DNA of 64,000 nucleotides from Podarcis liolepis (taxonomy: Eukaryota), in the NCBI GenBank assembly GCA_965112155.1, contig OZ218101.1; one strand, written 5' to 3'. Under the pieces are notes generated by a model, which was not told the origin of the DNA, did not search any database, and was given only the letters and a program-made list of their open reading frames with translations. Positions 22,844 through 61,000 of the stretch are shown here, piece by piece; position 1 is the first letter of the stretch; each line of letters starts with the position of its first letter. Made by a program: the position numbers and the translations under genes.

Positions 22844-23474
22844 ATTGCATCCCCCTTTCCTCCCCTCTCCCTGAAGCCTTCCCTGTGCCTCCAAATTCTG
22901 CTCCAGAGGGTTGGAGGATCCTCAAAAGTACACCAGGTGAAAAGTGGGGGTGGGCGACAGGGGAAAGGAAACAAGGGGAAGTCTGTTGCACAACTGGGTG
23001 GAAACTACTAGCTGTCATTCCTGCCTGAAAATAAAGTAGGTGAAAACACACAAAAAGGCCCAAATGTTGCTTCCACACAAAAATTCCTATTCCAACTGTG
23101 CGATCCTGGAACTTCAGAAACTAAATATAATGGAAAATTATGGAAAGGAAACACAAATATTGTATTTCATTGCCATCTATGGTCTCTCTTAATTTAATTT
23201 TTCACATGCATTGGTAGGATTGTGTATATCCAGCAGCCTAAAAATCTCTCTCTTTTTTTAGCATGATAGCAATGCCAGTAAAGCCAAAGGAGGAATTAGT
23301 AAGAGAACAGAACGCCTAAGATCAGTCCTCAGTACTCATGCTTCTGCTAACTTTCACATGTACTTTCCACTCTTCATTTCAGTAACTGGAATTCATAAAC
23401 AGAGAAGGAACACTAAGAGTGAACACTATGAACTACAGCAATGCTTTAATAGGCCACACTCAATGTAAAAGGTT

Positions 23475-23602
23475 CCCCTTCATGGATCACTGCCTTGCCG
23501 TGGCGAAGGGGCTTGAAGAACTCAGAGAAGCTATGAACTACGCCGAGCAGGGCACCCAAGATGAACAGGTCATAGTGGAGAGTTTTGACCAAACGTGATC
23601 TA
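23475..23602 (+). ncRNA. Predicted HDV-like self-cleaving ribozyme at the BovB 5' end
   Basis: Manual fold: P1 CCCCTTC/GAAGGGG, P2 TGGATCAC/GTGATCTA, P3 GCC/GGC, L3 TTGCCGT, P4 AGAACTC/GAGTTTT, J4/2 CAAA; activity untested. Confidence 0.65.
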
Positions 23603-23653
23603 CCTGGAGTAGGAACCGGCAAGCCACTCCAGTATCCCTGCCAAGAAAACTCC

Positions 23654-26600
23654 ATGGACAAAGACAACAGGCATATAAAAGTTATGACACTGGAAGATGA
23701 GCCCCTCAGGTCGGAAGGTGTCCAACATGCTACTGGGGAAGAGCGGAGGACAAGTACAAGTAGATCCAGAGCTGATGAAGCGGCTGGGCCAAAGCCGAAA
23801 GGACGCTCAGTTGTGGATATGCATGGAAGCGAAAGGAAAGTCCAATGCTGTAAAGAAAAATATTGCATAGGAACCTGGAATGTAAGAACCATGAACCTGG
23901 GTAAGTTGGATGTGGTCAAAAATGAGATGGCAAGAATAAATATTGACATCCTGGGCATCAGTGAGCTAAAATGGACGGGAATGGGCGAATTCAGTTCGGA
24001 TGACTATCATATCTACTACTGTGGGCAAGAAACCCGTAAGAGAAATGGAGTGGCCCTCATAGTCAACAAAAGAGTGGCGAAAGCTGTACTGGGATGCAGT
24101 CTCAAAAATGATAGAATGATCTCGATACGAATCCAAGGCAGACCTTTTAACATCACAGTAATCCAAGTTTATGCACCAACTACTAGTGCTGAAGAAACTG
24201 AAATTGACCAGTTCTATGAAGACTTACAAGACCTTATCGAAGTGACACCAAAGAAGGATGTTCTGCTCATTATAGGGGATTGGAATGCTAAAGTAGGGAA
24301 TCAAGAGATAAAAGGAACAACTGGCAAGTTTGGCCTTGGAGATCAAAACGAAGCAGGGCAAAGGCTAATAGAGTTCTGTCAAGAGAACAAGCTGGTCATC
24401 ACAAACACGCTTTTCCAACAACACAAGAGACGACTCTACACATGGACATCCCCAGATGGGCAACATCGAAATCAGATTGATTATATTCTCTGCAGCCAAA
24501 GATGGAGAAGCTCTATACAGTCAGCAAAAACAAGACCTGGAGCTGACTGTGGCTCAGATCATCAGCTTCTTATAGCAAAATTCAAGCTTAAACTGAAGAA
24601 AGTAGGAAAAACCACTGGACAGGTAAGATACAATCTAAACCAAATCCCTTATGAATACACAGTGGAAGTGAGGAACAGGTTTAAGGATTTAGATTTGCTG
24701 GACAGAGTGCCTGAAGAACTATGGATGGAGGCTCGCAACATTATACAGGAGGCAGCAACTAAAACCATCCCAATGAAAAAGAAATGCAAGAAAGCAAAGT
24801 GGCTGTCCAACGAGGCCTTACAAATAGCGGGGGAGAGAAGGCAAGCAAAATGCGAGGGAGATAGTGAAAGATACAGGAAACTGAATGCAGATTTCCAAAG
24901 AACAGCAAGGAGAGACAAGAAGGCCTTCTTAAACGAGCAATGCAAAGAAATAGAGGAAAGCAACAGAATGGGAAGAACCAGAGATCTGTTCAAGAAAATC
25001 GGAAATATGAAAGGAACATTTCGTACAAAGATTACCATAATAAAGGACAAAAGTGGTAAAGATCTAACTGAAGCAGAAGACATCAAGAAGAGGTGGCAAG
25101 AATACACAGAGGAATTATACCAGAAAGATATGGATGTCTCGTACACCCCAGGTAGTGTGGTTGCTGACCTTGAGCCAGACATCCTGGAGAGTGAAGTCAA
25201 ATGGGCCTTAGAAAGCACTGCAAATAACAAGGCCAGTGGAAGTGATGGTATTCCAGCTGAACTGTTTAAAATTTTAAAAGATGATGCTGTTAAGGTGCTA
25301 CACTCAATATGCCAGCAAGTTTGGAAAACTCAGCAGTGGCCAGAGGATTGGAGAAGATCAGTCTACATTCCAATCCCAAAGAAAGGCAGTGCCAAAGAAT
25401 GCTCCAACTACCGCACAATTTCACTCATTTCACATGCTAGCAAGGTTATGCTTAAAATTCTACAAGGAAGGCTCAAGCAGTATGTGGACCGAGAACTCCC
25501 AGAAGTGCAAGCTGGATTTAGAAGAGGCAGAGGAACCAGAGACCAAATTGCAAACATGCGCTGGATTATGGAGAAAGCTAGAGAGTTCCAGAAAGACATC
25601 TACTTCTGCTTCATTGACTATGCAAAAGCCTTTGACTGTGTTGACCACAGCAAACTATGGCAAGTTCTTAAAGAAATGGGAGTGCCTGATCACCTCATCT
25701 GTCTCCTGCGAAATCTCTATGTGGGACAAGAAGCTACAGTTAGAACTGGATATGGAACAACTGATTGGTTCCAAATTGGGAAAGGAGTACGGCAAGGCTG
25801 TATATTGTCTCCCTGCTTATTTAACTTATATGCAGAATTCATCATGCGAAAGGCTGGGCTGGATGAATCCCAAGCCGGAATTAAGATTGCCGGAAGAAAT
25901 ATCAACAACCTCAGATATGCAGATGACACAACCTTGATGGCAGAAAGTGAAGAGGAATTAAAGAACCTTTTAATGAGGGTGAAAGAGGAGAGCGCAAAAT
26001 ATGGTCTGAAGCTCAACATCAAAAAAACGAAGATCATGGCCACTGGGCCCATCACCTCCTGGCAAATAGATGGGGAAGAAATGGAGGCAGTGAGAGATTT
26101 TACTTTCTTGGGCTCCATGATCAGTGCAGATGGTGACAGCAGTCACGAAATTAAAAGACGCCTGCTTCTTGGGAGAAAGGCGATGGCAAACCTAGACAAC
26201 ATCTTAAAAAGCAGAGACATCACCTTGCCAACAAAGGTCCGTATAGTAAAAGCCATGGTTTTCCCAGTAGTGATGTATGGAAGTGAGAGCTGGACCATAA
26301 AGAAGGCTGATCGCCGAAGAATTGATGCTTTTGAATTATGGTGCTGGAGGAGACTCTTGAGAGTCCCATGGACTGCAAGAAGATCAAACCTCTCCATTCT
26401 GAAGGAAATCAGCCCTGAGTGCTCACTGGAAGGACAGATCGTGAAGCTGAGGCTCCAATACTTTGGCCACCTCATGAGAAGAGAAGACTCCCTGGAAAAG
26501 ACCCTGATGTTGGGAAAGATGGAGGGCACAAGGAGAAGGGGACGACAGAGAATGAGATGGTTGGATGGTGTTCTTGAAGCTACTAGCATGAGCTTGATCA

Positions 26601-26686
26601 AACTGCGGGAGGCAGTGGAGGACAGAAGTGCCTGGCGTGCTCTGGTCCATGGGGTCACGAAGCGTCGGACACGACTAAACGACTAA
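23654..26686 (+). CDS. BovB ORF: APE endonuclease + reverse transcriptase (1010 aa from first in-frame ATG; frame open from TTG at 23585)
   Basis: Endonuclease motifs GTWNVRT, LGISE, GDWNAK, IDYIL, SDH; RT motifs QAGFR, FIDYAKAFD, GVRQGCILSP, YADD; no stops or frameshifts. Confidence 0.96.
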   Translation: MDKDNRHIKVMTLEDEPLRSEGVQHATGEERRTSTSRSRADEAAGPKPKGRSVVDMHGSERKVQCCKEKYCIGTWNVRTMNLGKLDVVKNEMARINIDILGISELKWTGMGEFSSDDYHIYYCGQETRKRNGVALIVNKRVAKAVLGCSLKNDRMISIRIQGRPFNITVIQVYAPTTSAEETEIDQFYEDLQDLIEVTPKKDVLLIIGDWNAKVGNQEIKGTTGKFGLGDQNEAGQRLIEFCQENKLVITNTLFQQHKRRLYTWTSPDGQHRNQIDYILCSQRWRSSIQSAKTRPGADCGSDHQLLIAKFKLKLKKVGKTTGQVRYNLNQIPYEYTVEVRNRFKDLDLLDRVPEELWMEARNIIQEAATKTIPMKKKCKKAKWLSNEALQIAGERRQAKCEGDSERYRKLNADFQRTARRDKKAFLNEQCKEIEESNRMGRTRDLFKKIGNMKGTFRTKITIIKDKSGKDLTEAEDIKKRWQEYTEELYQKDMDVSYTPGSVVADLEPDILESEVKWALESTANNKASGSDGIPAELFKILKDDAVKVLHSICQQVWKTQQWPEDWRRSVYIPIPKKGSAKECSNYRTISLISHASKVMLKILQGRLKQYVDRELPEVQAGFRRGRGTRDQIANMRWIMEKAREFQKDIYFCFIDYAKAFDCVDHSKLWQVLKEMGVPDHLICLLRNLYVGQEATVRTGYGTTDWFQIGKGVRQGCILSPCLFNLYAEFIMRKAGLDESQAGIKIAGRNINNLRYADDTTLMAESEEELKNLLMRVKEESAKYGLKLNIKKTKIMATGPITSWQIDGEEMEAVRDFTFLGSMISADGDSSHEIKRRLLLGRKAMANLDNILKSRDITLPTKVRIVKAMVFPVVMYGSESWTIKKADRRRIDAFELWCWRRLLRVPWTARRSNLSILKEISPECSLEGQIVKLRLQYFGHLMRREDSLEKTLMLGKMEGTRRRGRQRMRWLDGVLEATSMSLIKLREAVEDRSAWRALVHGVTKRRTRLND

Positions 26687-28156
26687 ACAACAACAAATGT
26701 AAAAGGTACTATGATGGAATACATTCTTGTTTAATCCGTTGATCCTGTTCCCTGAAACCAGTGAGGTAAACTGCCTGGATCACTGCAAACCAACTGGGAA
26801 AGGCTAACTGGTTCTTCTGTAACTAAATGAGAATCATTTCCTGGAACAGTTTCTGCAGGAATTCCATTGGTTTGCATCTAGCAAAGAGACACTGATTAAT
26901 TTTAGCTCAGCTAACTAGAAACACACAATGTCCTTGGAATGTTATGATTAACCACTTCGCGTTACAGCAGATTCTTCTGAAAATATTTGATTCATAACCG
27001 GTTACTGTTGAGCAAAACACAACCCTGCTCCAACCAGAAACTTTCTAGATTATACAGCTGCATGAATGAGAGCCATCTTGTTTCTTTTTTCACAGTTATA
27101 TACAAAAACATGCCTTGATAATTTAGGACAAAATAGACACAGAAAATCTGTCTTTGATTCAGGCTGATCATGGCTAAAGAAACCAAAGTTATAAACTGTG
27201 GAATAAAATGATAATATCAGTAGAGGGGGAACAGACAGACTAAATATGAAATACAATCACAAGTTTATAAATTATAAAAAACAGACCCCTTATGGAGAAT
27301 TAAGTCTAGCGCCATGCAAAAGTACTGGGTGGTATTCAACCACATTTTACTCACTGTAGACCCATAGAAATTAACAAACATGACTAATTTAGGCCCACTA
27401 ATTTCATTGAGTCTACTCTGAGTAAAACAAAGCTGAATACTATCCTCTGCCTTTACCACAGGAGTGGTAGCTAAGACATAGAGTATGAGAGTGTATATAC
27501 ATAGCAAAGACCAAAAGACATTCAAGTTGCTTCAGAAGTATAACAATAGTAGATATAGATCTATTATATGACAAAGTCTGATATATTGATATATGACTAC
27601 AGCCAACCTAGGCTATAGGTATATTCCACAGTATCAAATTTTGTATCCAGATTAAAAAATAAAAAATGCATTAAGTATACCAGAGGTATACTGTAGCTGG
27701 ATAATAATCTACAATGCAAGCCTTAATTTCACCCACTTGTCAGGAGTGTTAGAATTAAATCAGTATGCAAGGATAAGGATAGGTTTCAGAAACAGGAGAG
27801 GCAGGAGAAGGACAAATGGTTTATAACAGTAGTAATGAAAAGGGAACGTTAAGACATTTTTCCACTAGAATTTTCAGGATGGTGAAAATAATAACAGATC
27901 AAGGAGAATATAATTTGGCAACTTTTAAAGGAGATAATGGGACTGCAAATACATTATTATGTATTAGAGAAGTACTGGACTAAGTGTCCGTACAGCTTTT
28001 GATAGGAAGGACAGTAGAGTGGAAAAGGACATTAGCAGGATGCATTATGGAGTCAGGATATAAAATGAGGGAATAGTAGAAATTAGAGATTGCAGCATGG
28101 AGGGCATCCCCAGTAGAATACCTGATGAGATATACGTATAATAAGAGTGTACTCAC

Positions 28157-36774: not shown

Positions 36775-37347
36775 ATGCTGTGGCCACAGACATGTGATCT
36801 GATGGTGAATTTGGGGTGACCCAATGCAAAAATCCTGAGAATCCCTGTGGATCCATGCTTTGTAACCACGTTTTTGCACCATTGCAGCCCCAGGCAACAG
36901 TGGGTGCGTGATTTTTTTTGGGGGGGGGACAGGCTGTAGCCATGGACATGCTATGTGCTCTGATGGTGAATTTTGGCTGACCCAATGCAAAGATCCTGAG
37001 GATCCATGTGGATCCATGCTTTGTAACCACGTTTTTGCACCATTGCAGCCCCAGGCAACAGTGGGTGCGTGATTTTTTTTTGGGGGGGGACAGGCTGTAG
37101 CCATGGACATGCTATGTGCTCTGATGGTGAATTTTGGCTGACCCAATGCAAAGATCCTGAGGATCCATGTGGATCCATGCTTTGTAACCACGTTTTTGCA
37201 CCATTGCAGCCCCAGGCAACAATGGGTGTGTGATTTTGGGGGGGCAGGCTGTAGCCATGGACATGCTGTGTGCTCTGATGGTGAATTTGGGGTGACCCAA
37301 TGCAAAGATCCTGAGGATCCATGTGGATCCATGCTTTGTAACCACAT
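36775..37347. repeat. ~161-bp tandem repeat, about 3.6 copies
   Basis: Anchor gatccatgctttgtaaccac at 36850, 37011, 37172, 37326. Confidence 0.92.
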
Positions 37348-37784
37348 TTTAAGTGGGGAGGGAAGGAAAAACACAGAAGGCTAAGAATGCAGGAGAGGGC
37401 TATAACGTGAGGAAAGGAAGGCAAAAGTTTCCCCCCACCCACCCACCCAAGCCAGCCAGCGTGCGCTCTCTCTCTCTCTCTCTCCCTCCCACCAGCATGA
37501 CAGAAGAAAGCATTTTAACTGCATTAAGAACTATTTAGCAGCGAAACCTAAGCTTTGCCATCCCTTAAGAGGTATAGACACTGTAATCTTCCAGATCGCA
37601 TGAATTTACAGGCAAAACACTGTTTAAGGATTTCATCCTTTTAAATGGAAGAAAGCATATTTGAATGCTGTGTGTCTCCAAAAACAAAAAGTAGGAAGTC
37701 AAATCAGAATTTTAAGCCGAACCTGTAATCTCTCTTCCCTTCACAAACATTGTTCCCTCCGGAGCAGGGAGAGGATAGAACGAA

Positions 37785-37963
37785 GGACGCTCTGCTCTCC
37801 TCTCTACTTGCCTGGAGGGGAGGGGCTTTCCCTGCTCTTTGTTTGGACGCTCTGCTCTCCTCTCTACTTGCCTGGAGGGGAGGGGCTTTCCCTGCTCTTT
37901 GTTTGGACGCTCTGCTCTCCTCTCTACTTGCCTGGAGGGGAGGGGCTTTCCCTGCTCTTTGTT
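37785..37963. repeat. 60-bp perfect tandem repeat x3
   Basis: Consecutive 60-nt rows are identical (tctctacttgcctggaggggaggggctttccctgctctttgtt). Confidence 0.95.
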
Positions 37964-38843
37964 CCGTTTGAGCAAACACAGTAACGAAACAGAGCAGGGT
38001 GGGCAGTAAGACCCTGAGGCAGAATGCAGGAAAGAACAGCTTCCTGTCTCACGGAGCTCCCTTCTCCCTGAAGCGCGGTTTGATTTTTGCCTCATTTTTC
38101 GGCTCCAGGGAGCACACATTCGCTCCATAACACGCACAGACATTTCCCCTTCCTTTTTAGGAGCAAAAATCTGCGTGTTATAGAGCGAAAAATACGGTAT
38201 ATAAAAACAGGTGCACTTTCAGTATAATTTCACATTCCTAACTCACTAAGTATTTCACTTGCTACAGCAAGGCTACTAGACTAGAAGGAGGGTACACTTC
38301 CTACCAGTAACTTACAGAAACCAAGTGCAAGGAGCAGAGGAAATTGGATGCCAACGTCATAAATAAGATTGAACAGTCTTTTATCAAAGCAAATTCCTTG
38401 AAAGGGTAACAGCAGTGAATAACAGAGCAAGCCAAACCCTGGCCAGAGAGTTGCAGAGACACTGCTACATCTGCAGCCTCATTGCTCATGCTGGTCAGGG
38501 CAAAAGCACAGCCGCCTGGCTAGATATCATCAAGTGATGGCAGTGGAGATGGCTCAGGATCCAGGGAATCCCTATCAGTTCAGCCACTTGCCCTCCCTGG
38601 AACACTCCACTTACAGACATCTCACAGCTTACAGCAAGTCAGAAGTTTGTTGGGGGGTGAACAGGAAGCCCAGCATCAGTGAAGGTGTTGCGGGCTGAGG
38701 GAGAATCTCTGCCCAGCTCACCCCCCGTGGCAGGTCAGAGACTTAGACTGAGCCCTTAGTCAAGAGGAGTTTATTTAAAGACGGCCACTCAGACCTTTTT
38801 TGCATTTAAATGTTGAATGAAGAAAATGTGTTGTTGTAAAATA

Positions 38844-39069
38844 CAGTGGTACCTCGGGTTACAGAAGCTTCAGGTTACAGACTCCGCCAACCCAGATATA
38901 GTACCTCGGGTTAAGAACTTTACTTCAGGATGAGAACAGAAATTGTGCTCTGGCGGCGCGGCAGTAGCGGGAGGCCCCATTAGCTAAAGTGGTGCTTCAG
39001 GTTAAGAACAGTTTCAGGTTATGAAGGGACCTCTGGAATGAATTCATTTCTTAACCAGAGGTACCACTG
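38844..39069 (+). mobile_element. Tc1/mariner MITE family A, copy 2
   Basis: TA-CAGTGGTACCTCGGGTTA...AGGTACCACTG. Confidence 0.9.
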
Positions 39070-39099
39070 TGCTCATCTTTGGCCACAGAATTCTGTGAG

Positions 39100-49039: not shown

Positions 49040-50389
49040 CTCAAGGATCTAAGCAGCACTAAAGCAGCAGCCATGTTAGCTGGAGCACAGCATTTGTCTA
49101 CCAACCTCTCATCCAGACTTGGCTGCTCAAAGGAAGTTACTCTAAAACACTTCCTAGGATGACACTGCTTTAAAGCAAAATATCAAGATGGGTGTATTTC
49201 AGTGTGACTTGGCACTGGGAACTGCCAAAGATAAGAAGCACTGCATTTATCAACACCTTCCCAGAAACAAACAGAAGCCTCCGTATGACTCTCCTCTTTC
49301 TTCAGACCCTACTTACTAATTTCCACTTACTTAAACCAGGCAGTTATCCAACTTTCAATGTCAAAGATGGCAAAGCAGCCTTCGCCACCTGACGCAAAAC
49401 CAAGAGATGTAGATTTTAACAATTTCTTATCACTTTGTTGTCTGGGTAACCCAAAGAAACACACCAGGCTCTTACTCATCCTCGTGAATCCAAATCAAAA
49501 TACACTACGGACTACTAAAATACTGCTTTCCTCCAGCAAGAGTTCATTTTATATAAAAACATTTAAATGGATGTGAAGAAAATTTAGAGCACAATTCCTT
49601 ACACTTTTAATGTGTAACATCATTATCACATTAGGAACATTAGTATTCCAAGTAAAACTCGTGGAACACATATTTGCACTAACTTCTATATGATTCTACA
49701 TTACTTTTAGCAGCATATAATTGCCTTGCTCACAAGGGACACCCAGCAAGAATGAGCTGCATGTACCAGATCTCTAATCTGTCTTATGATTTGGCTAGTA
49801 AATCAGACTAGTGAAGGGCTGGTCGCGAAAGGTGATTCATTATAGCCAGTCATTTTCTCCAGCAGGATGAGTGTACTGAAATGACACATTGCCAAAGACT
49901 GTTTAGCCCTCTGGTGTGTTCATCACCACATATTAGTCTTACTCTAAAACAGATACAGATAGATGTATAACATGTTTACATCAGTAACAACTGAAAGATT
50001 GCAGTGGAGCTAAGTTGTAGAAGAAAGTAAGTAAAAAATAAGTCAATTTACAATGGTTTTCCATATTAGAAAATATTGTCTAGATGTTTCAATGCAAGAT
50101 AAATCACAAAATTCCAAGTATTACAGTTGCTAGTGTAATCTGGCATTTCAAATACCTGACTGCACAGTATGAAAACAATCAAATAATTGGAAAAATAATG
50201 CAAGTTACAATACAAAGAAGATTGCAAACTTATTTTATCTTGCAACCTTTCTGGTAAAAGATTTGAGTGTAAAAGCTATGCAGGTCAAAGGTCATTAACA
50301 GGAAAAATGATATTTTGTAGGTATATGTATCGTTTAGCATTTTTATGAATTTTGTACTAAGAGCAATGTACATATCACAGTAAATAATA

Positions 50390-50609
50390 CAGTGGTACCT
50401 CGGGTTAAGAACTTAATTCGTTCAGGAGGTCCATTCTTAACCTGAAACTGTTCTTAACCTGAATCACCACTTTAGCTAATGGGGCCTCCTGCTGCGCCGC
50501 CGGAGCACGATTTCTGTTCTCATCCTGAAGCAAAGTTCTTAACCCGAGGTACTATTTCTGGGTTAGCGGAGTCTGTAACCTGAAGCGTCTGTAACCTAAG
50601 GTACCACTG
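50390..50609 (-). mobile_element. Tc1/mariner MITE family A, copy 3 (inverted)
   Basis: TA TSD both sides; reverse complement of copies 1 and 2. Confidence 0.9.
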
Positions 50610-52304
50610 TACTGTCTTTACAATGATCATGTTCAGACACAACTACAGGTAATCAATTAGCCTATGCATGAGCCACGTGAAAGTGCATGCAAACTGAGCT
50701 CTCCTGCTTCGCTCCTCCCTTCCTCTGTCAGGGAAACAAACCATGGAGTGGCAGGCTTAGCAATACTCCAAACCAGTGCTTGTGGGTTGTTTCTCTCAAA
50801 ACAGACCACAATTCTGAAGCCAAGTTTTTTTCTTGGTTGCCCACTTCCCAATCATGCTTGGGGGGGGGGGGTAAGCAAGCTATGAGTGCTGGTTCAGACA
50901 TAATGCAAAGCCAGTAGTTTCCCTGAAGCTTCAAAACAGTAGAGCTCAGCATACTCACACTTCAATGTGGCTTGCGCACAGGTTAATTTGGCTAACTGCA
51001 GTTAAGAGTGCAGAAATGATATATCACTACAATGAGCCAGATATTTTTGGAAAACGCTGAAGACAGCTATTAGTAAGGGCTTCATTTTTTTCTATTTGCA
51101 GCCTAATTATATTCATATTTACTCAGAAGTAGTCATGTTAATTTCAACAGAACTTACTCCTAGGTGAATATGCTTAGGGCTGAATCCCTAAGTTATATTT
51201 TTGTTTCTCTCAAACTGCTTACTGCTCCATATTTTTCGCTCCATATTTATTTCTTAAAACTGAAGATGAAGAGGATGATGTAAACAACCTGTATACTTCA
51301 CTCAGGCACAGCAATGGTTACAGTTAATGTTTTTTAAATTTTTTCTTTCACTGATTTGTACATCTTACTTTTTACAGCTGTGTTCTCAAAAATTAATAAA
51401 CATATTTTTTCAATTGCTCCTTGTAGGTTTAAATGCTGTTTTTTAGGTAATTCATAAGCAAATCATTGGATTAACTGGTAATGCACATTCTAGTGTGTTT
51501 TCAATTCTATAACCTTCAAGCAAGAAACTGAAATCTCTCACAATGCCGCCCTGCAAATATAGCATCTTGTTCGTTTACATTTCCGGCATTTTACAGGAAC
51601 ATATACATGTTTGTTTAAAATGTCAGTTTAAAAGTTGCAACACAGCTCTGTACACATTCTTCTTTGCTACCGTATTTGCTTCAGCTGGGAGGGCATAGTA
51701 TCTCCACAAGGTTGTTGCAAGGATATTGGTGGTGAGAATAGCAGCTTGCCACAACCCATGACAGTACAATAGGAAAGTGTGCCAGGGATGAAAAGTATGA
51801 ACAGTTTAAAGGCACCTAGAACAGATTCCAAGCCTCATTTGATAGCAGACAATTGTCTGCATAGGTTATGGTACCCCCAGCCCTCTATTAATATGACCAG
51901 CGCTTTCCCTACTGACAGTCTCAATAAAAGGCAAAGAAGCAATTTTTCAGAAAGGGGCTTATTCTCACTTCAAACCATTAAATACTACAATTTGCCTTCT
52001 TAAAACATTTTGATATAAGCAAATACTATAGCCATGATTAAATACTTACATGATGAAAACACTTAAAATATAATTAGGAGGTTTTAAAATAAAGTAATGC
52101 ACACTTTCCCCATCTCTCCAGCCAGCCATCTACACACAATGTGCTTTTGTCCTGTATTCCACTAAGCAAAATGAATTTGAGTTACTGTTATAATCTTTTT
52201 TCCCTTCCCTAACATCCATTTTTGATGAGAGTCATGCATTTGGGACAAAAAAAAAAGTAACCTCACCTATCTGAGGTCTGAACTGGCTGTGACTGACAAG
52301 GAAT

Positions 52305-56850: not shown

Positions 56851-57785
56851 TTGTACGTATTCAGTATGACTATTCTGGAGTTTATTTTTTATTTTATTTT
56901 TTAAAAAAAAAACCTCATAAAAGTTTTGGCTTAACAAAAAACCAAAACCCTGTTAACTCCGAACTAAAACTGGACTCTGCAACCCTGAACACATGTTAGA
57001 TTTTAGAAGCCTTACAGGATTTTTCTTATAAAAGCATGGCTAAAGAGTCAACAAGGAATCCCAAATACTTGCCTCCACCTTCACATCCTGGCATTCTTAA
57101 CTCATCCCTTGGGTTTCCGTCCAGTGTAGTTTATCCCTCTGATGAAATTTATATGACACACTATTCTACTTTGTTAATTTTAAAGAACCAGGTTTACGAT
57201 TCTGTAAATAATTGTTTTTGATTTGATTTTGCAGTTGCTGAAAAGATGAAGAATCAGCAGAACAATCCCATGCAGTTGGGTGGGACTTTGTAATCATATA
57301 TTTCAAACAACATGCCTTCCCTGCACCTAAAAAAGAAATATGGTCCTCCTAAATTATGTGTTTAATAAATATAGGTAGAATTATACTTATTATTGTATAA
57401 GCCTCTGTCTAATTACTTTCCACATTCTTGGGTTGAAAAAGAAAAATGGAAAAGGTTTTAAAATATATGTTTAAAAAGTATACTTCAGTGTGCATCCTTA
57501 GGACACTGTAGTTATCATTGTGTGATTCAATCATATACAGTACCAGCAAATTCATGTTGCACAACTATTGGAAATTGGGAGGTCTTCCACAACAAATCTA
57601 CTTTCCCCAAAGACCTGACTTTTAGCAACATAAAAAGTGGTGGGGAAATTTACTGGAAAGTGTGGGCTAACATTTGCTTTGATGCAACTGACATCCAACT
57701 TCCCTGCAAACTGATCAGGATCAATGTTCAGTAGACATCATCCAGAAGCAGCCTTAGAGTTGAAGAGATCCACAGAGGGGCAGTA

Positions 57786-58008
57786 CAATGGTACCTCGGG
57801 TTACATATGCTTCAGGTTACAGACTCCGCAAACCCAGAAATAGTACCTTGGGTTAAGAACTTTGCTTCAGGATGAGAACAGAAATTGTCGTGCTCTGGCG
57901 GCGCAGCAGGAGGCCCCATTAGCTAAAGTGGTGCTTCAGGTTAAGAACAGTTTCAGGTTAAGAACGGACCTCCAGAACGAATTAAGTAATTAACCCGATG
58001 TACCACTG
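57786..58008 (+). mobile_element. Tc1/mariner MITE family A, copy 4
   Basis: TA TSD; same internal sequence. Confidence 0.9.
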
Positions 58009-61000
58009 TATACAGGTCAACCCTCATCATTAAAACAAGATAGTCTTGGCTTCAATGCTGCCTATTCTAACGACTTTGAACATATTGAAACTTCTGAGTG
58101 AGCAATATGCTTAGGATTGCATCTCAATCCTCATTAACACTTAATTGGGAGGAACTTCTATTGAACACTGTAAGACTTCCTTCTGAGTAAGCATGCATAG
58201 GGTTGTGCTGTTAGGGTGCCACTATATCCGACAATGTCGTAGTCTGACTCAGGCAATGCTGAATACATTGGAAAGAGGAAAGACTTAAGACACAGAATGG
58301 AAGTTAGGAGCGAAGCCCTTCTAGCTGTGCTTTTCTCTCAAATACTCTTTTCGTTGTTGAGAACATAAGAAGAGCTTGCTGGAACAGGCTAATGACTCAT
58401 CTAATCCAGCATCCTCTTGTCACAGTGGCCAACCAGAGGCCTGTGTTGTTTGTTTTGCTGTTTTGATCACAGATAGGTTTACTTCCAATTGCAGAGTTCT
58501 ACTGAAACAAAAATAGTTTCCTGTCAAACACAAGTATGATGCATACTTTGAAGTTTCCCTAGTACTGTACCATCCTAACAAAAAGGTCTGCAGCCATTAT
58601 AACTATTTCTTCTCTTGAGCATGACCACCAAGGAGGAAGTTTAGTCTATTTGTTGATGGTTTTTAGGGTTCAGCGTTTTTTTCTGACATGCAAGAAAACA
58701 TGCAAAATACTGCCAGAGAATGGACACTTTGTTTGTTTGTTTGTTTGTTTGGCAATGCATAGTCTCTGTTCCTAGGAATGCATTGGGTCCAATGTGTGCC
58801 TTATAAAATAGAAAATGCAGTTATTACATATGGCACATCTTCTTCAAGACCAGTATTAAGCATTATATTTTTTGCCAATGAATTATTTCATTGAATACAT
58901 ATAATTAGTAGGAAACTGTTTATAAAATTCATAAGGTATGGGGGGTGTTAAAACACATATCTGTTGGTTTAAATCTGTTGACTTAATTGTGACTTGCATA
59001 CTGATTACAAACCTATTTATCTGGATCTGAGCTCAATTATAATCAACATTTATTTCCAAATAAATGACCAGGAGTGTTAAATTTTAGTATTTGTATCAGT
59101 AAACAGCAGGGCACACTACATCTATTTTTACTGCAGTTTTATTTCAATTGAACTCAAAGTGACCAAGAATTACAAATAAAACATGAGGCGTTTCTCTATA
59201 AGGAAAATGATAAAATCCACAGGTGGCTTAATACCTTTATAGTAACAACAAAAATAACACAAAATAGAAATAAAGTTTTGGAGTTCTCTAGAACTCTTCA
59301 CATTGCGGAGTGTTACACAAATCGTGTTTTTCCCTACCCTGTTTCTTCCTCCTGCTAACATCTATCCTGATTGAAAATTGTGGAGAAATCAAAAGCTCAC
59401 TCACTATCGTGTAATGTTTTGACTTTCCAAATGAAGATATTGCCCAATTGTGGATTTTGGAACCTTTGCAAAGTGCAAGAATGCTGGTTTGAGCAATTTG
59501 TGGTGGAGGAAAGGCAGGCTATATAGGAGGATGCTGTCTCAAGACATGACTGTACATGTTTTCTTTCATACTGTACATGAGTTACCTATGATAGTTGTTC
59601 ATTGCTGCTGAAACTGATGATAAATATGAGGATGGTGACAGGTAAGATCTCATTTGCAATCATCACGATCATTTTATCATGTGAGTGGCTTCCTATGTTC
59701 TTGGCTTCCTGGAGTGTAATTGACATCCACCAGGAATTTAGAATTCCTGCCAGTGTTCTGATGTAATCTTGAGAATGTGGATGTGGGCGGGATTGTTGCA
59801 GCCTCAAATGGGAGTTCTAACAAAGTACATTTGAATAAACAAGGACGCTGCACTCCTATTTTTGATTCTGAGGCAAAGTGCTGTGCTGGAAGAGGCCCAG
59901 GGTCACACTCCTAAATTGCTTAAGGCTTGAATCCTAAATACACTTGCTAGGGAGTAAGCACCACTGAAAACAGTGGAATTTACTTCTAAGTAAATGTGTT
60001 TAGGATTGCACTGTAAAGCTCCGTAGGAGACATGGCTTTCCTATGGTACAATCTTCCTGAGGGGGGAAAAGGTAGCCATATGTTTGTACCTATATGTATA
60101 AAAACTTAAACTAAGGGAAACTTTGCCCTTCTAAACAATATCTGATAGCATTATTATTTTATTACATTTATATTTTGCCCTCCCTCCTAGCAACTCAAGA
60201 CAGTGTACAGCTAGAGGGTCACTGGTTTTCCACCTCGTAGGTTGTTGGACTCCATTTCCTATCAACCTCAGCTGGCTTGGCCAGGGATGATGGGAGTTAT
60301 ATTCCAGCAGCATCTGAGGAGCCAGAGGTTCCCCATCCCTGGCATACAACAGTGTGATGGAGCAGCAAAAAAGTGTTGAAACCATCCACTGAGTAGTTGG
60401 TTGCAAGTTGAGGTGTTCTACCTTTTACATTTCACACGAGGGAATGACAAATTACACATTGCTATTTAACAGCTGCTTCCAGCGGTTTCATGTAGATGTT
60501 AAATAACACTGTGGACAATATGTTATTCTGCAGCACACCACACTACGATAGCTGGCGGACTGAGGTGATGCCACCCAACCCTATTCTCTATAACCAGTTC
60601 TGTAGGTAGGAGTGGAATCCCCCTAATTCACAAAAGCTGTCTAGGAGGATGCCATGATTCTTGGTACCAACAGCCTCTGAGAGATCAAGTAGAAACAGCA
60701 TCACAATCTCCCTTTCCTTCTTCTGATACAGGTCACCCCTCAGGGGAAACAAGATTGATCTGGTTCCAAAATGCAGCTTGAACTCAGATTGGAACAGGTC
60801 CAGCTAACCAATATTCTCCAGAAGCTCCTGTAACTGCACTGCCACCACCCTGGTGCATCTTGTCTAGGATGGAGCTATTTGTGACTGGGTGGTTGTTGTC
60901 AAGAACCCTCTATGTCAAGAGTGGGCTTCAGAAGTAGATGCAGGTTTAAGGGCAGCAGGCAGATTGGACTCTGGACCCACCCCAGGATTGAGAAGAGTGC

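What the first reader, a model, noticed from the sequence alone, without database searches (positions are those of the whole stretch)
23475..23602. HDV-like self-cleaving ribozyme fold exactly at the 5' end of a full-length BovB LINE
Seen in sequence, in canonical HDV order: P1 CCCCTTC (23475-81), A, P2 TGGATCAC (23483-90), P3 GCC (23492-94), L3 TTGCCGT (23495-501), P3' GGC, P1' GAAGGGG (23505-11), then P1.1 as G23497-C23512 plus T.T. P4 is AGAACTC (23517-23)/GAGTTTT (23580-86) with an inner helix GCTATGA/TCATAGT. J4/2 contains CAAA (candidate catalytic C23590) and is followed by P2' GTGATCTA (23595-602). L3 keeps the U20, C24 and G25 equivalents. The predicted cut 5' of C23475 is 1 nt from the TSD end (23473). 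Established: HDV-like ribozymes process the 5' ends of R2, L1Tc and invertebrate RTE elements; L1Tc uses a C1-G first pair and CPEB3 a one-bp P1.1, as here. Inference: BovB cuts itself out of host read-through transcripts, needs no host-specific promoter and may use the fold to initiate translation, which could help explain its frequent horizontal transfer. I do not recall a characterised squamate BovB ribozyme but cannot verify novelty.
Basis: partly seen in the sequence, partly recalled or inferred. Interest (0 to 1): 0.9.

Follow-up and report, generated by a model that had tools for sequence, protein, structure and literature searches.

The report
HDV-like ribozyme fold heading lizard BovB
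The first 128 bases of an intact BovB jumping gene in a lacertid lizard have all the parts of a hepatitis-delta-type self-cutting RNA, inherited from the RTE group of elements where such ribozymes are already known, but cutting itself is still untested.

Summary
A lenient HDV descriptor hits only 23475 in both strands of the window and nothing in 100 dinucleotide shuffles, about 12.8 Mb.

The element is an intact 3.2-kb BovB with APE and RT domains. It is 96% identical to Podarcis proteins and 76-80% to Bos proteins.

Comparative support is good:
- A 59%-identical relative (L005) carries a compact 78-nt HDV-like ribozyme at the same place (Rfam RF02682, E=0.0026). Its P1, P2, P3 and P1.1 differ in sequence but stay paired.
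- A distant RTE (L033/L030) has the canonical form with the same CAAAC J4/2.
- In two lizard DNA runs the best-supported listed 5' junctions of copies lie at 23473-23477.

Cleavage remains unproven. Two RNA-seq runs show no pile-up of starts at 23475, and some reads cross it. The first P1 pair is C-G rather than G.U, and P1.1 is a single reversed pair.

Ruminant-type BovB has lost the core through an 18-nt deletion and has a longer 5' UTR, which weakens the link to horizontal transfer.

HDV-like ribozymes in RTE elements are published, so this is a new member of a known kind.

A covarying pseudoknot (23604-23642) lies just downstream.

The parts
23462..23473 (+). 5' target-site duplication AATGTAAAAGGT. 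T23474 lies between it and C+1.
   Evidence: same 12-mer at 26696-26707.
23475..23481 (+). P1 5' strand CCCCTTC. The predicted cleavage is 5' of C23475.
   Evidence: The Rfam RF02682 alignment starts here. The best-supported listed DNA loose ends lie at 23473-23477.
23483..23490 (+). P2 5' strand TGGATCAC.
   Evidence: Also predicted in the unconstrained MFE fold.
23492..23504 (+). P3 (GCC/GGC) enclosing L3 TTGCCGT. U20, C24 and G25 equivalents are T23495, C23499 and G23500.
23505..23512 (+). P1 3' strand GAAGGGG plus C23512, the P1.1 partner of G23497.
23513..23589 (+). P4 domain of 77 nt. Base helix AACTC 23519-23 / GAGTT 23580-84; distal helix 23530-36 / 23570-76.
   Evidence: The domain varies in length among lineages (19 to 77 nt).
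23590..23594 (+). J4/2 CAAAC. C23590 is the candidate catalytic cytosine.
   Evidence: Same CAAAC in the canonical L033/L030, where the HDV model aligns its C75 position to that C.
23595..23602 (+). P2 3' strand GTGATCTA. The family letter at 23601 is C.
23482..23598 (+). ORF1 of 38 codons in this copy. In most family copies it is a 12-codon uORF (TAA at 23518-20).
   Evidence: L005 has a 13-codon uORF at the same place.
23604..23642 (+). Conserved H-type pseudoknot: stem 1 23604-09 / 23627-32, stem 2 23618-21 / 23639-42. Its 3' end lies 12 nt before the ORF2 ATG.
   Evidence: Alignment A5: 100% of cells paired, 5 of 10 pairs changed on both sides, 0 of 500 shuffles reach it.
23654..26686 (+). 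ORF2, 1010 codons, uninterrupted, with APE endonuclease and reverse transcriptase domains.
26696..26707 (+). 3' target-site duplication, after a short CAA-repeat tail.

Best explanation
The first 128 nt of this intact lacertid BovB (23475-23602) encode an HDV-like, nested double-pseudoknot self-cleaving ribozyme inherited from the RTE-clade ancestor.

Inferred mechanism: when the element is transcribed from outside, as part of a host or read-through transcript, P1 and P3 fold first. P2 and P1.1 then close the double pseudoknot. C23590 in J4/2 acts as general acid and the RNA is cut 5' of C23475. The cut leaves a 5'-OH RNA that starts at the element's first base, so new copies begin at C+1 and no internal promoter is needed.

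Shown: the fold, its homology with RTE ribozymes, covariation, and family 5' ends at the predicted site.

Inferred: catalysis, and any role in translation together with the short uORF and the downstream pseudoknot.
For: 1. All helices are present. The descriptor gives 1 hit in the window and 0 in 100 shuffles.
2. In a narrow Rfam scan the only match of 4227 families is an HDV ribozyme family. It starts at 23475 and aligns P1 and P3 as proposed (weak, 14.9 bits, E=1).
3. L005 (ORF2 59% identical) has a complete compact HDV-like ribozyme whose P3 lies 162 nt before the ORF2 ATG, the same distance as in the lizard (RF02682, 26.3 bits, E=0.0026).
4. Against L005, 5 of 7 P1 pairs, the first P3 pair and the P1.1 pair (G-C versus T-A) are changed on both sides yet stay paired. 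Against L033, all 7 P1 pairs differ and stay paired.
5. L3 keeps T-Y-N-N-C-G-T in all lineages, and J4/2 keeps C-N-A-A.
6. A P1-independent descriptor found about 13 sites in all loci plus the window. The 4 with a perfect P1 all lie on the sense strand just upstream of an RTE/BovB ORF2.
7. DNA contigs of two lizard organisms break into diverse flanks at 23473/74/75 (19, 27 and 38 contigs) and at 23474/75/77 (29, 30 and 21).
8. The family letter C at 23601 perfects P2. None of the 40 listed best-supported variants falls in 23475-23517.
9. The ORF1 reading frame is not conserved, so coding does not explain the conservation.
10. An internally deleted derivative keeps exactly the 5' 200 nt plus the 3' end.
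11. HDV-like ribozymes at RTE 5' ends are published (cited in PMC6765202, PMC5786205 and PMC3774820).
Against: - No experiment has been done.
- In two RNA-seq runs no pile-up of read starts at 23475 reached the tool's threshold. 42 and 68 reads run through the site into one foreign flank. The strand of those reads is unknown, and that copy has G at -1.
- The Rfam score is far below the gathering score (14.9 versus 44 bits), although the canonical L033 also fails it.
- The first P1 pair is C-G, not the usual G.U wobble. P1.1 is one pair with reversed polarity next to a T.T. The C21/C22 equivalents are T and G.
- A fully nested alternative fold (P2 plus GCCUUGC/GCAGGGC) has about the same predicted energy: -38.1 versus about -38 to -41 kcal/mol.
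- The z-score of the region is only -1.1.
- L009 has P2, P3, L3 and J4/2 but no nearby P1.
- Ruminant BovB does without the core.
Confidence: 0.6

Rival explanations
1. Conserved fold without cleavage. The HDV-type fold is kept as a structural 5' module, for example for protection of the 5' end, ribosome recruitment or ORF2-protein binding. The 5' end of the RNA is set by transcription initiation at an internal promoter, as in many LINEs.
For: - No start pile-up, and reads cross the site in RNA-seq.
- Core deviations from the canon: C1-G37 and a single reversed P1.1 pair.
- P2 pairing is still kept, with a T-A to C-G change, in ruminant BovB whose ribozyme core is deleted. At least that helix therefore has a use beyond catalysis.
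- A separate covarying pseudoknot lies next to it.
- A 5'-junction pile-up fits any fixed 5' end.
Against: - Two lineages keep a perfect 7-bp P1 that starts at the first base, the L3 U/C/G positions and a C-N-A-A strand. These are the parts needed for catalysis.
- L1Tc is active with a single-pair P1.1 (PMC3185411).
- RTE elements are described as lacking promoters of their own (PMC6765202).
Confidence: 0.25
2. The functional structure is the nested alternative, P2 extended by 23491-98 / 23547-54 plus inner hairpins. The HDV-like pairing is then a minor or non-functional conformer.
For: - It is the unconstrained MFE and centroid fold.
- GCCTTG and a G-rich partner persist in ruminant BovB.
- Predicted energies are equal within error.
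Against: - The z-score is only -1.09.
- It does not explain the perfect P1 in the lizard and L005, or the conserved L3 and J4/2 motifs.
- P1 and P3 are transcribed and can fold before the competing strand exists.
Confidence: 0.1
3. Chance resemblance in a GC-rich 5' UTR.
For: The descriptor was written after the fact, and the Rfam hit is only E=1.
Against: - 0 of 100 shuffles match.
- The same fold sits at the same place in L005 with different sequence.
- It coincides with the element's first base.
Confidence: 0.03

Closest known systems
HDV-like ribozymes at the 5' ends of RTE-clade non-LTR retrotransposons (Ruminski et al. 2011, as cited in PMC6765202, PMC5786205, PMC3774820)
   Same: - Same clade of element (APE+RT, 3.2 kb, tiny 3' UTR).
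- Same position at the very 5' end, same topology, and a cut site equal to the element's first base.
- The canonical example found here (L033/L030) shares P3-L3 architecture and the CAAAC J4/2.
   Different: - C1-G37 instead of G1.U37.
- L3 is UUGCCGU instead of UCCUCGU.
- P1.1 is one G-C pair of reversed polarity instead of two C-G pairs.
- P4 is a 77-nt domain and P2 is 8 bp.
- I found no paper naming BovB or a squamate host. The 2011 paper itself was not readable here.
L1Tc ribozyme (L1TcRz) of Trypanosoma cruzi (PMC3185411)
   Same: - 5'-terminal HDV-like ribozyme of an APE-type LINE flanked by TSDs.
- A single-pair P1.1.
- Cleavage at the element's first nucleotide.
- A G at -1 can extend P1 and disturb P1.1. 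The read-through lizard copy seen in RNA has G at -1.
   Different: Different LINE clade (Ingi/L1Tc) and a 77-nt compact form. It is proven active, whereas this one is not.
R2 ribozymes (PMC3774820, PMC13708176)
   Same: - HDV-like fold in the 5' UTR that processes a co-transcript.
- Compensatory changes in P1 between species.
- Conserved P1.1/P3/L3.
- A proposed role in translation, and a protein-binding pseudoknot nearby.
   Different: R2 is site-specific in rDNA with an RLE endonuclease. It often cuts upstream in the 28S sequence and has J1/2 loops of up to hundreds of nt.
CPEB3 ribozyme of mammals (Rfam RF00622; features from memory, not tested)
   Same: As I recall it: a 1-nt J1/2, 7-nt L3 of the form UU-N-N-CGU, and one P1.1 pair beside a U.U. 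This is the same layout as here.
   Different: It is a single-copy intronic ribozyme that is not part of a transposon. The Rfam CPEB3 model gave no match at E up to 10, so no specific kinship is shown.

Membership tests
HDV-like self-cleaving ribozyme | Nested double-pseudoknot order P1-P2-P3-L3-P3'-P1'-(P1.1)-P4-J4/2-P2' | tested here: met
HDV-like self-cleaving ribozyme | 7-bp P1 starting at the cleavage site, first pair usually a G.U wobble | tested here: inconclusive
   P1 is 7 perfect pairs, but the first pair is C23475-G23511. L005 also has C-G, whereas L033 has G.T. Whether C-G is tolerated needs an assay.
HDV-like self-cleaving ribozyme | 3-bp P3 closing a 7-8 nt L3 with U20, C24 and G25 | tested here: met
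   GCC/GGC with TTGCCGT. T, C and G stand at the right places in all 5 sequences compared.
HDV-like self-cleaving ribozyme | P1.1 of two C-G pairs between L3 and the bases after P1' | tested here: not met
   Only G23497-C23512, of reversed polarity, next to T.T. Single-pair P1.1 exists in the active L1TcRz, so this is a variant rather than an exclusion.
HDV-like self-cleaving ribozyme | Unpaired catalytic C followed by N-A-A in J4/2, just 5' of P2' | tested here: met
   C23590-AAA-C, identical to L033's CAAAC, which the HDV models align to the C75 strand.
HDV-like self-cleaving ribozyme | Helices supported by compensatory changes among relatives | tested here: met
   P1, P2, P3 and P1.1 across the lizard, L005, L009 and L033/L030. 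Only 3-4 independent lineages were available.
HDV-like self-cleaving ribozyme | Score above the curated threshold of an Rfam HDV-type model | tested here: not met
   RF02682 scores 14.9 bits against a gathering score of 44. L005 (26.3) and the canonical L033 (29.1 versus 50) also fall below it.
HDV-like self-cleaving ribozyme | Divalent-ion-dependent self-cleavage giving 5'-OH and 2',3'-cyclic phosphate ends | not testable with these tools
   RNA-seq gave no start pile-up at 23475. That library type is not suited to 5'-OH ends.
BovB / RTE-clade LINE | About 3.2 kb, one long ORF with APE and RT domains, very short 3' UTR with a simple-repeat tail, TSD, and close kinship to Bos BovB | tested here: met
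   96% to Podarcis, 92% to Zootoca, 76-80% to Bos proteins.

The most novel reading that the evidence does not exclude
Squamate BovB carries an active, non-canonical HDV-like ribozyme (C1-G37, one reversed P1.1 pair) that works as one unit with a short uORF and the conserved downstream pseudoknot. The ribozyme sets the 5' end and the pseudoknot drives cap-independent ORF2 translation or binds ORF2 protein. On this reading the module was lost in the ruminant lineage by an 18-nt microhomology deletion, together with the gain of a 5' UTR of at least 450 nt, which would be a switch from promoter-independent to promoter-driven expression. A further, weaker reading is that the mammalian CPEB3 ribozyme, which as I recall has the same unusual core layout, descends from such an RTE/BovB ribozyme.
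Probability: 0.3. Interest if true: 0.7.

Novelty: new member of a known kind. Interest (0 to 1): 0.55.

Why it matters
BovB is the textbook case of a LINE that moves between distant animals, and how it is expressed after arriving in a new genome is not understood. A self-cutting 5' end would let a new copy use any host transcript that runs through it.

The data also show that this is not universal. Ruminant-type BovB has deleted the ribozyme core and extended its 5' UTR. That gives a natural comparison between two expression strategies within one family.

The lizard core would also be a natural test of how much deviation the HDV fold tolerates at the G.U cleavage-site wobble and in P1.1.

The covarying pseudoknot before ORF2 is shared by all BovB-like lineages examined. 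It is also kept in an internally deleted non-autonomous derivative. It is a candidate cis element for translation or for recognition by the element's own protein.

Tried and rejected
The 5' ends of the best protein relatives (Podarcis, Varanus, Paragonimus, Rotaria and others) could therefore not be fetched.
- Viral contigs held no relative.
- Genome contigs gave only ruminant-type contaminants or 5'-truncated pieces.
- The strict descriptor found nothing in L001-L080. Relaxing J1/2 and dropping the P1 requirement was needed.
- MAFFT misaligned the ribozyme cores, so pairs were tabulated by coordinates in a script.
- The Rfam scan of 6 kb gave no HDV hit. Only the narrow scan did.
- L009's P1: the best upstream complement (GAGTCGC at 97, one mismatch, 96-nt J1/2) is no better than chance.
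- L008 and L007 contigs stop inside or after the ribozyme region, so they cannot be used for the core.
- No TSD was found for L005.
- RNA 5' ends: there was no pile-up at 23475, the strand convention of the library is unknown, and the coverage of one mate class falls off gradually toward 23475 while the other stays flat. This is suggestive only.
- A compact alternative P2' in the lizard (AGTGG 23574-78) was considered and rejected, because its J4/2 lacks C-N-A-A.
- Papers not held: Ruminski 2011, Webb 2009, Webb and Luptak 2011.
- Literature searches pairing ribozyme or HDV-like with BovB, Bov-B or RTE-BovB found no report.
- The fold of the ruminant region was cut one helix short and was not pursued.

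Full report
**The element.** The finding lies at the 5' end of a 3.2-kb insertion (23474/5-26695). It is flanked by the 12-nt duplication AATGTAAAAGGT (23462-73 and 26696-26707) and ends in a short CAA-repeat tail. It has one uninterrupted ORF of 1010 codons from ATG 23654, with Exo_endo_phos and RVT_1 domains. The best protein matches are Podarcis muralis (96%), Zootoca vivipara (92%), Varanus, Anolis and Bos BovB-type proteins (76-80%). It is therefore an intact BovB (RTE clade) in a lacertid lizard. No other BovB piece lies in the window.

**The observation.**
- P1, 7 Watson-Crick pairs.
- P2, 8 pairs with one G.T.
- P3, 3 pairs around a 7-nt L3, TTGCCGT.
- One P1.1 pair, G23497-C23512, beside a T.T.
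- A two-part P4.
- J4/2 GACCAAAC before P2'.

I wrote a lenient HDV descriptor and scanned both strands of the window. It gave one site, 23475. It gave no site in 100 dinucleotide-preserving shuffles, about 12.8 Mb. The descriptor was written after seeing the candidate, so this is an upper bound on surprise, but the margin is large.

A 6-kb Rfam scan gave no HDV hit. When only 23465-23615 was searched, the single match among 4227 families was an HDV ribozyme family (RF02682). It starts at 23475 and aligns P1 and P3 exactly as proposed, but weakly: 14.9 bits, E=1, against a gathering score of 44.

**Relatives.** I therefore used a metagenome scan with an alignment of 18 ORF2 homologues, plus scans of genome contigs and viral contigs that added little. 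Three kinds of 5' end were informative.

1. L033 and L030 are two copies of a distant RTE, 33% identical in ORF2.
- Both carry a canonical HDV-like ribozyme: GGGAACC / ACC-TCCTCGT-GGT / GGTTCCT, a two-pair P1.1, a short P4 and J4/2 CAAAC.
- L033 scores 29.1 bits on RF00094, E=0.015.
- The two copies stop being alike exactly at G1.
- This is the published kind: RTE families with 5' HDV-like ribozymes, cited in PMC6765202, PMC5786205 and PMC3774820.

2. L005 is 59% identical in ORF2 and shares the BovB 5' UTR motif. It has a complete compact 78-nt ribozyme at 643-720:
- P1 CTCTCAT/ATGAGAG.
- P2 ACGTGCA/TGCGCGT.
- P3 ACC/GGT.
- L3 TTTACGT.
- P1.1 T-A.
- A 7-bp P4.
- J4/2 CCAA.
- It scores 26.3 bits on RF02682, E=0.0026.
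- Its P3 lies 162 nt before the ORF2 ATG, the same distance as in the lizard.

3. L009 (50% identical) keeps an 8-bp P2, P3, L3 TTCTCGT, a 7-bp P4 and J4/2 CGAAC. It has no convincing P1 nearby.

**Covariation.** Tabulated by coordinates:
- Lizard versus L005: 5 of 7 P1 pairs, the first P3 pair and the P1.1 pair differ on both sides and remain paired.
- Lizard versus L033: all 7 P1 pairs differ and remain paired.
- P2 is different in every lineage and always paired.
- L3 keeps T-Y-N-N-C-G-T, and J4/2 keeps C-N-A-A.
- L3 and P1.1 form a graded series from the canonical form to the lizard form: CC/GG, then C-G plus T.T, then T-A plus T.T, then G-C plus T.T.

A descriptor that ignores P1 found about 13 sites in all loci plus the window. 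The four with a perfect P1 were exactly the sense-strand sites just upstream of an RTE/BovB ORF2. Only three or four independent lineages were available, so this is good but not deep covariation.

**The family in lizard genomes.** I laid Logan contigs of two DNA runs from two organisms, and raw reads of two RNA-seq runs, on 23200-24100.
- DNA contigs break into unrelated flanks at 23473, 23474 and 23475 (19, 27 and 38 contigs) in one organism, and at 23474, 23475 and 23477 (29, 30 and 21) in the other. Among the loose ends the tool listed (414 more were not shown), the junctions of family copies therefore cluster at the predicted cut, plus or minus 2.
- The family letter at 23601 is C in nearly all depth, which turns the G.T of P2 into G-C.
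It also makes TAA, so ORF1 is a 12-codon uORF in most copies.
- L005 has a 13-codon uORF at the same place. Coding for ORF1 therefore does not explain the conservation.
- None of the 40 listed best-supported variants lies in 23475-23517. 41 further rows were not shown.
- The summed depth of the first 200 nt is about twice that of 23800-24100.
- RNA reads show a junction from about 23674 to sequence that matches 26621-26647. This indicates an internally deleted non-autonomous derivative that keeps the ribozyme, the pseudoknot and the 3' end.

**RNA evidence is inconclusive.**
- No position near 23475 reached the tool's threshold for many molecules beginning there.
- 42 and 68 reads cross 23475 into one foreign flank ending in ...GGGAAG.
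- That copy has G at -1. This G could pair with C23512 and destroy the single P1.1 pair, an effect described for L1TcRz (PMC3185411). That is an inference.
- The strand of those reads is not known.
- One mate class has flat coverage up to the boundary. The other falls gradually over the last 150 nt, as expected for RNAs that end there. I do not count this as evidence.

**Energetics.** With P1 and P3 forced and the P2 strands kept free, the rest folds to -29.6 kcal/mol. P2 adds about -8.7, or -11.0 with the family C. The unconstrained nested optimum is -38.1, with z = -1.09. It uses P2 plus a helix 23491-98 / 23547-54 that competes with P3 and L3. The two folds are about equal. Co-transcriptional order favours P1 and P3.

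**Ruminant-type BovB.** Five contigs (L002, L004, L011, L017, L018; 75-80% identical in ORF2) differ as follows:
- They share at least 450 nt of 5' UTR.
- They lack 18 nt between two CTTG repeats. That block is the 3' half of L3, P3' and P1'.
- They have AGAAT where the lizard has CAAAC.
- They still keep a P2-like pair, GGACCAC/GTGGTCC, with a T-A to C-G change relative to the lizard.

The ribozyme is thus not a general property of BovB.

**A second conserved structure.** Between the ribozyme and the ORF2 ATG lies a motif shared by the lizard, ruminant-type copies, L005, L007, L008 and L009. It forms an H-type pseudoknot: stem 1 is 23604-09 / 23627-32 and stem 2 is 23618-21 / 23639-42. On alignment A5, 100% of cells are paired and 5 of 10 pairs show changes on both sides. 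No shuffle out of 500 reaches the observed score, and slid controls fall to 31-50% paired.

**Verdict.**
- The fold is real, conserved and homologous to the known RTE ribozymes (about 0.85).
- That it still cuts in this family is likely but unproven (about 0.6).
- The deviations from the canon are C1-G37, one reversed P1.1 pair and T/G at the C21/C22 positions.
- The main rival is a conserved fold without catalysis.

No paper in the held library links a ribozyme to BovB. The key 2011 paper could not be read, so prior mention cannot be excluded. I file it as a new member of a known kind. Another first-stage note reports the same topology on a second BovB copy in this genome (s1-847564); I did not check it.

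Noticed in passing
window 23604-23642: An H-type pseudoknot (23604-09/23627-32 and 23618-21/23639-42) lies just before the ORF2 ATG. It is conserved with compensatory changes in the lizard, ruminant-type BovB, L005, L007, L008 and L009. It is a candidate translation or protein-binding element.
   Followed up: yes
L002, L004, L011, L017, L018 (e.g. L018:1943-2397): Ruminant-type BovB has at least 450 nt of 5' UTR. It lacks 18 nt covering P3'/P1' (a deletion between CTTG repeats) and has AGAAT in place of CAAAC. It still keeps a P2-like pairing, GGACCAC/GTGGTCC.
   Followed up: partly
window 23674 joined to about 26618 (seen in RNA reads; match 26621-26647): An internally deleted, non-autonomous BovB derivative keeps the 5' 200 nt (ribozyme plus pseudoknot) and the last 80 nt or so. 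The summed DNA depth of the 5' 200 nt is about twice that of 23800-24100.
   Followed up: partly
window 23482-23598 (23518): The 38-codon ORF1 is private to this copy. The family-majority T at 23518 gives TAA and a 12-codon uORF. L005 has a 13-codon uORF over the same part of its ribozyme.
   Followed up: partly
L033:74-140 and L030:92-158: A canonical 67-nt HDV-like ribozyme sits at the 5' end of a distant RTE family. The two copies diverge exactly upstream of G1.
   Followed up: yes
L032:19-73: A type-P1 twister ribozyme-like match (RF03160, 41.5 bits, E=1e-5, below gathering) lies at the 5' end of another RTE-like element (32% identical ORF2). It may be a different ribozyme class doing the same job.
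   Followed up: no
L018:1112-1161 (inverted) and L018:1636-1685: Extra copies of the 44-50 nt pseudoknot motif lie upstream in a ruminant-type contig. They are probably BovB-derived SINEs (Bov-A type) that keep this 5' motif.
   Followed up: no
RNA reads at window 23475: Most read-through reads come from one other copy whose flank ends ...CTCTGGGAAG. Its G at -1 could pair with C23512 and undo the single P1.1 pair.
   Followed up: no
window 36792-37428; 37785-37964; 1963-2192, 38842-39071, 57784-58010, 50387-50614: Tandem repeats of 161 nt (4 copies) and 60 nt (3 copies), and a dispersed repeat family of about 230 nt (5 copies, one inverted). None is related to BovB.
   Followed up: no
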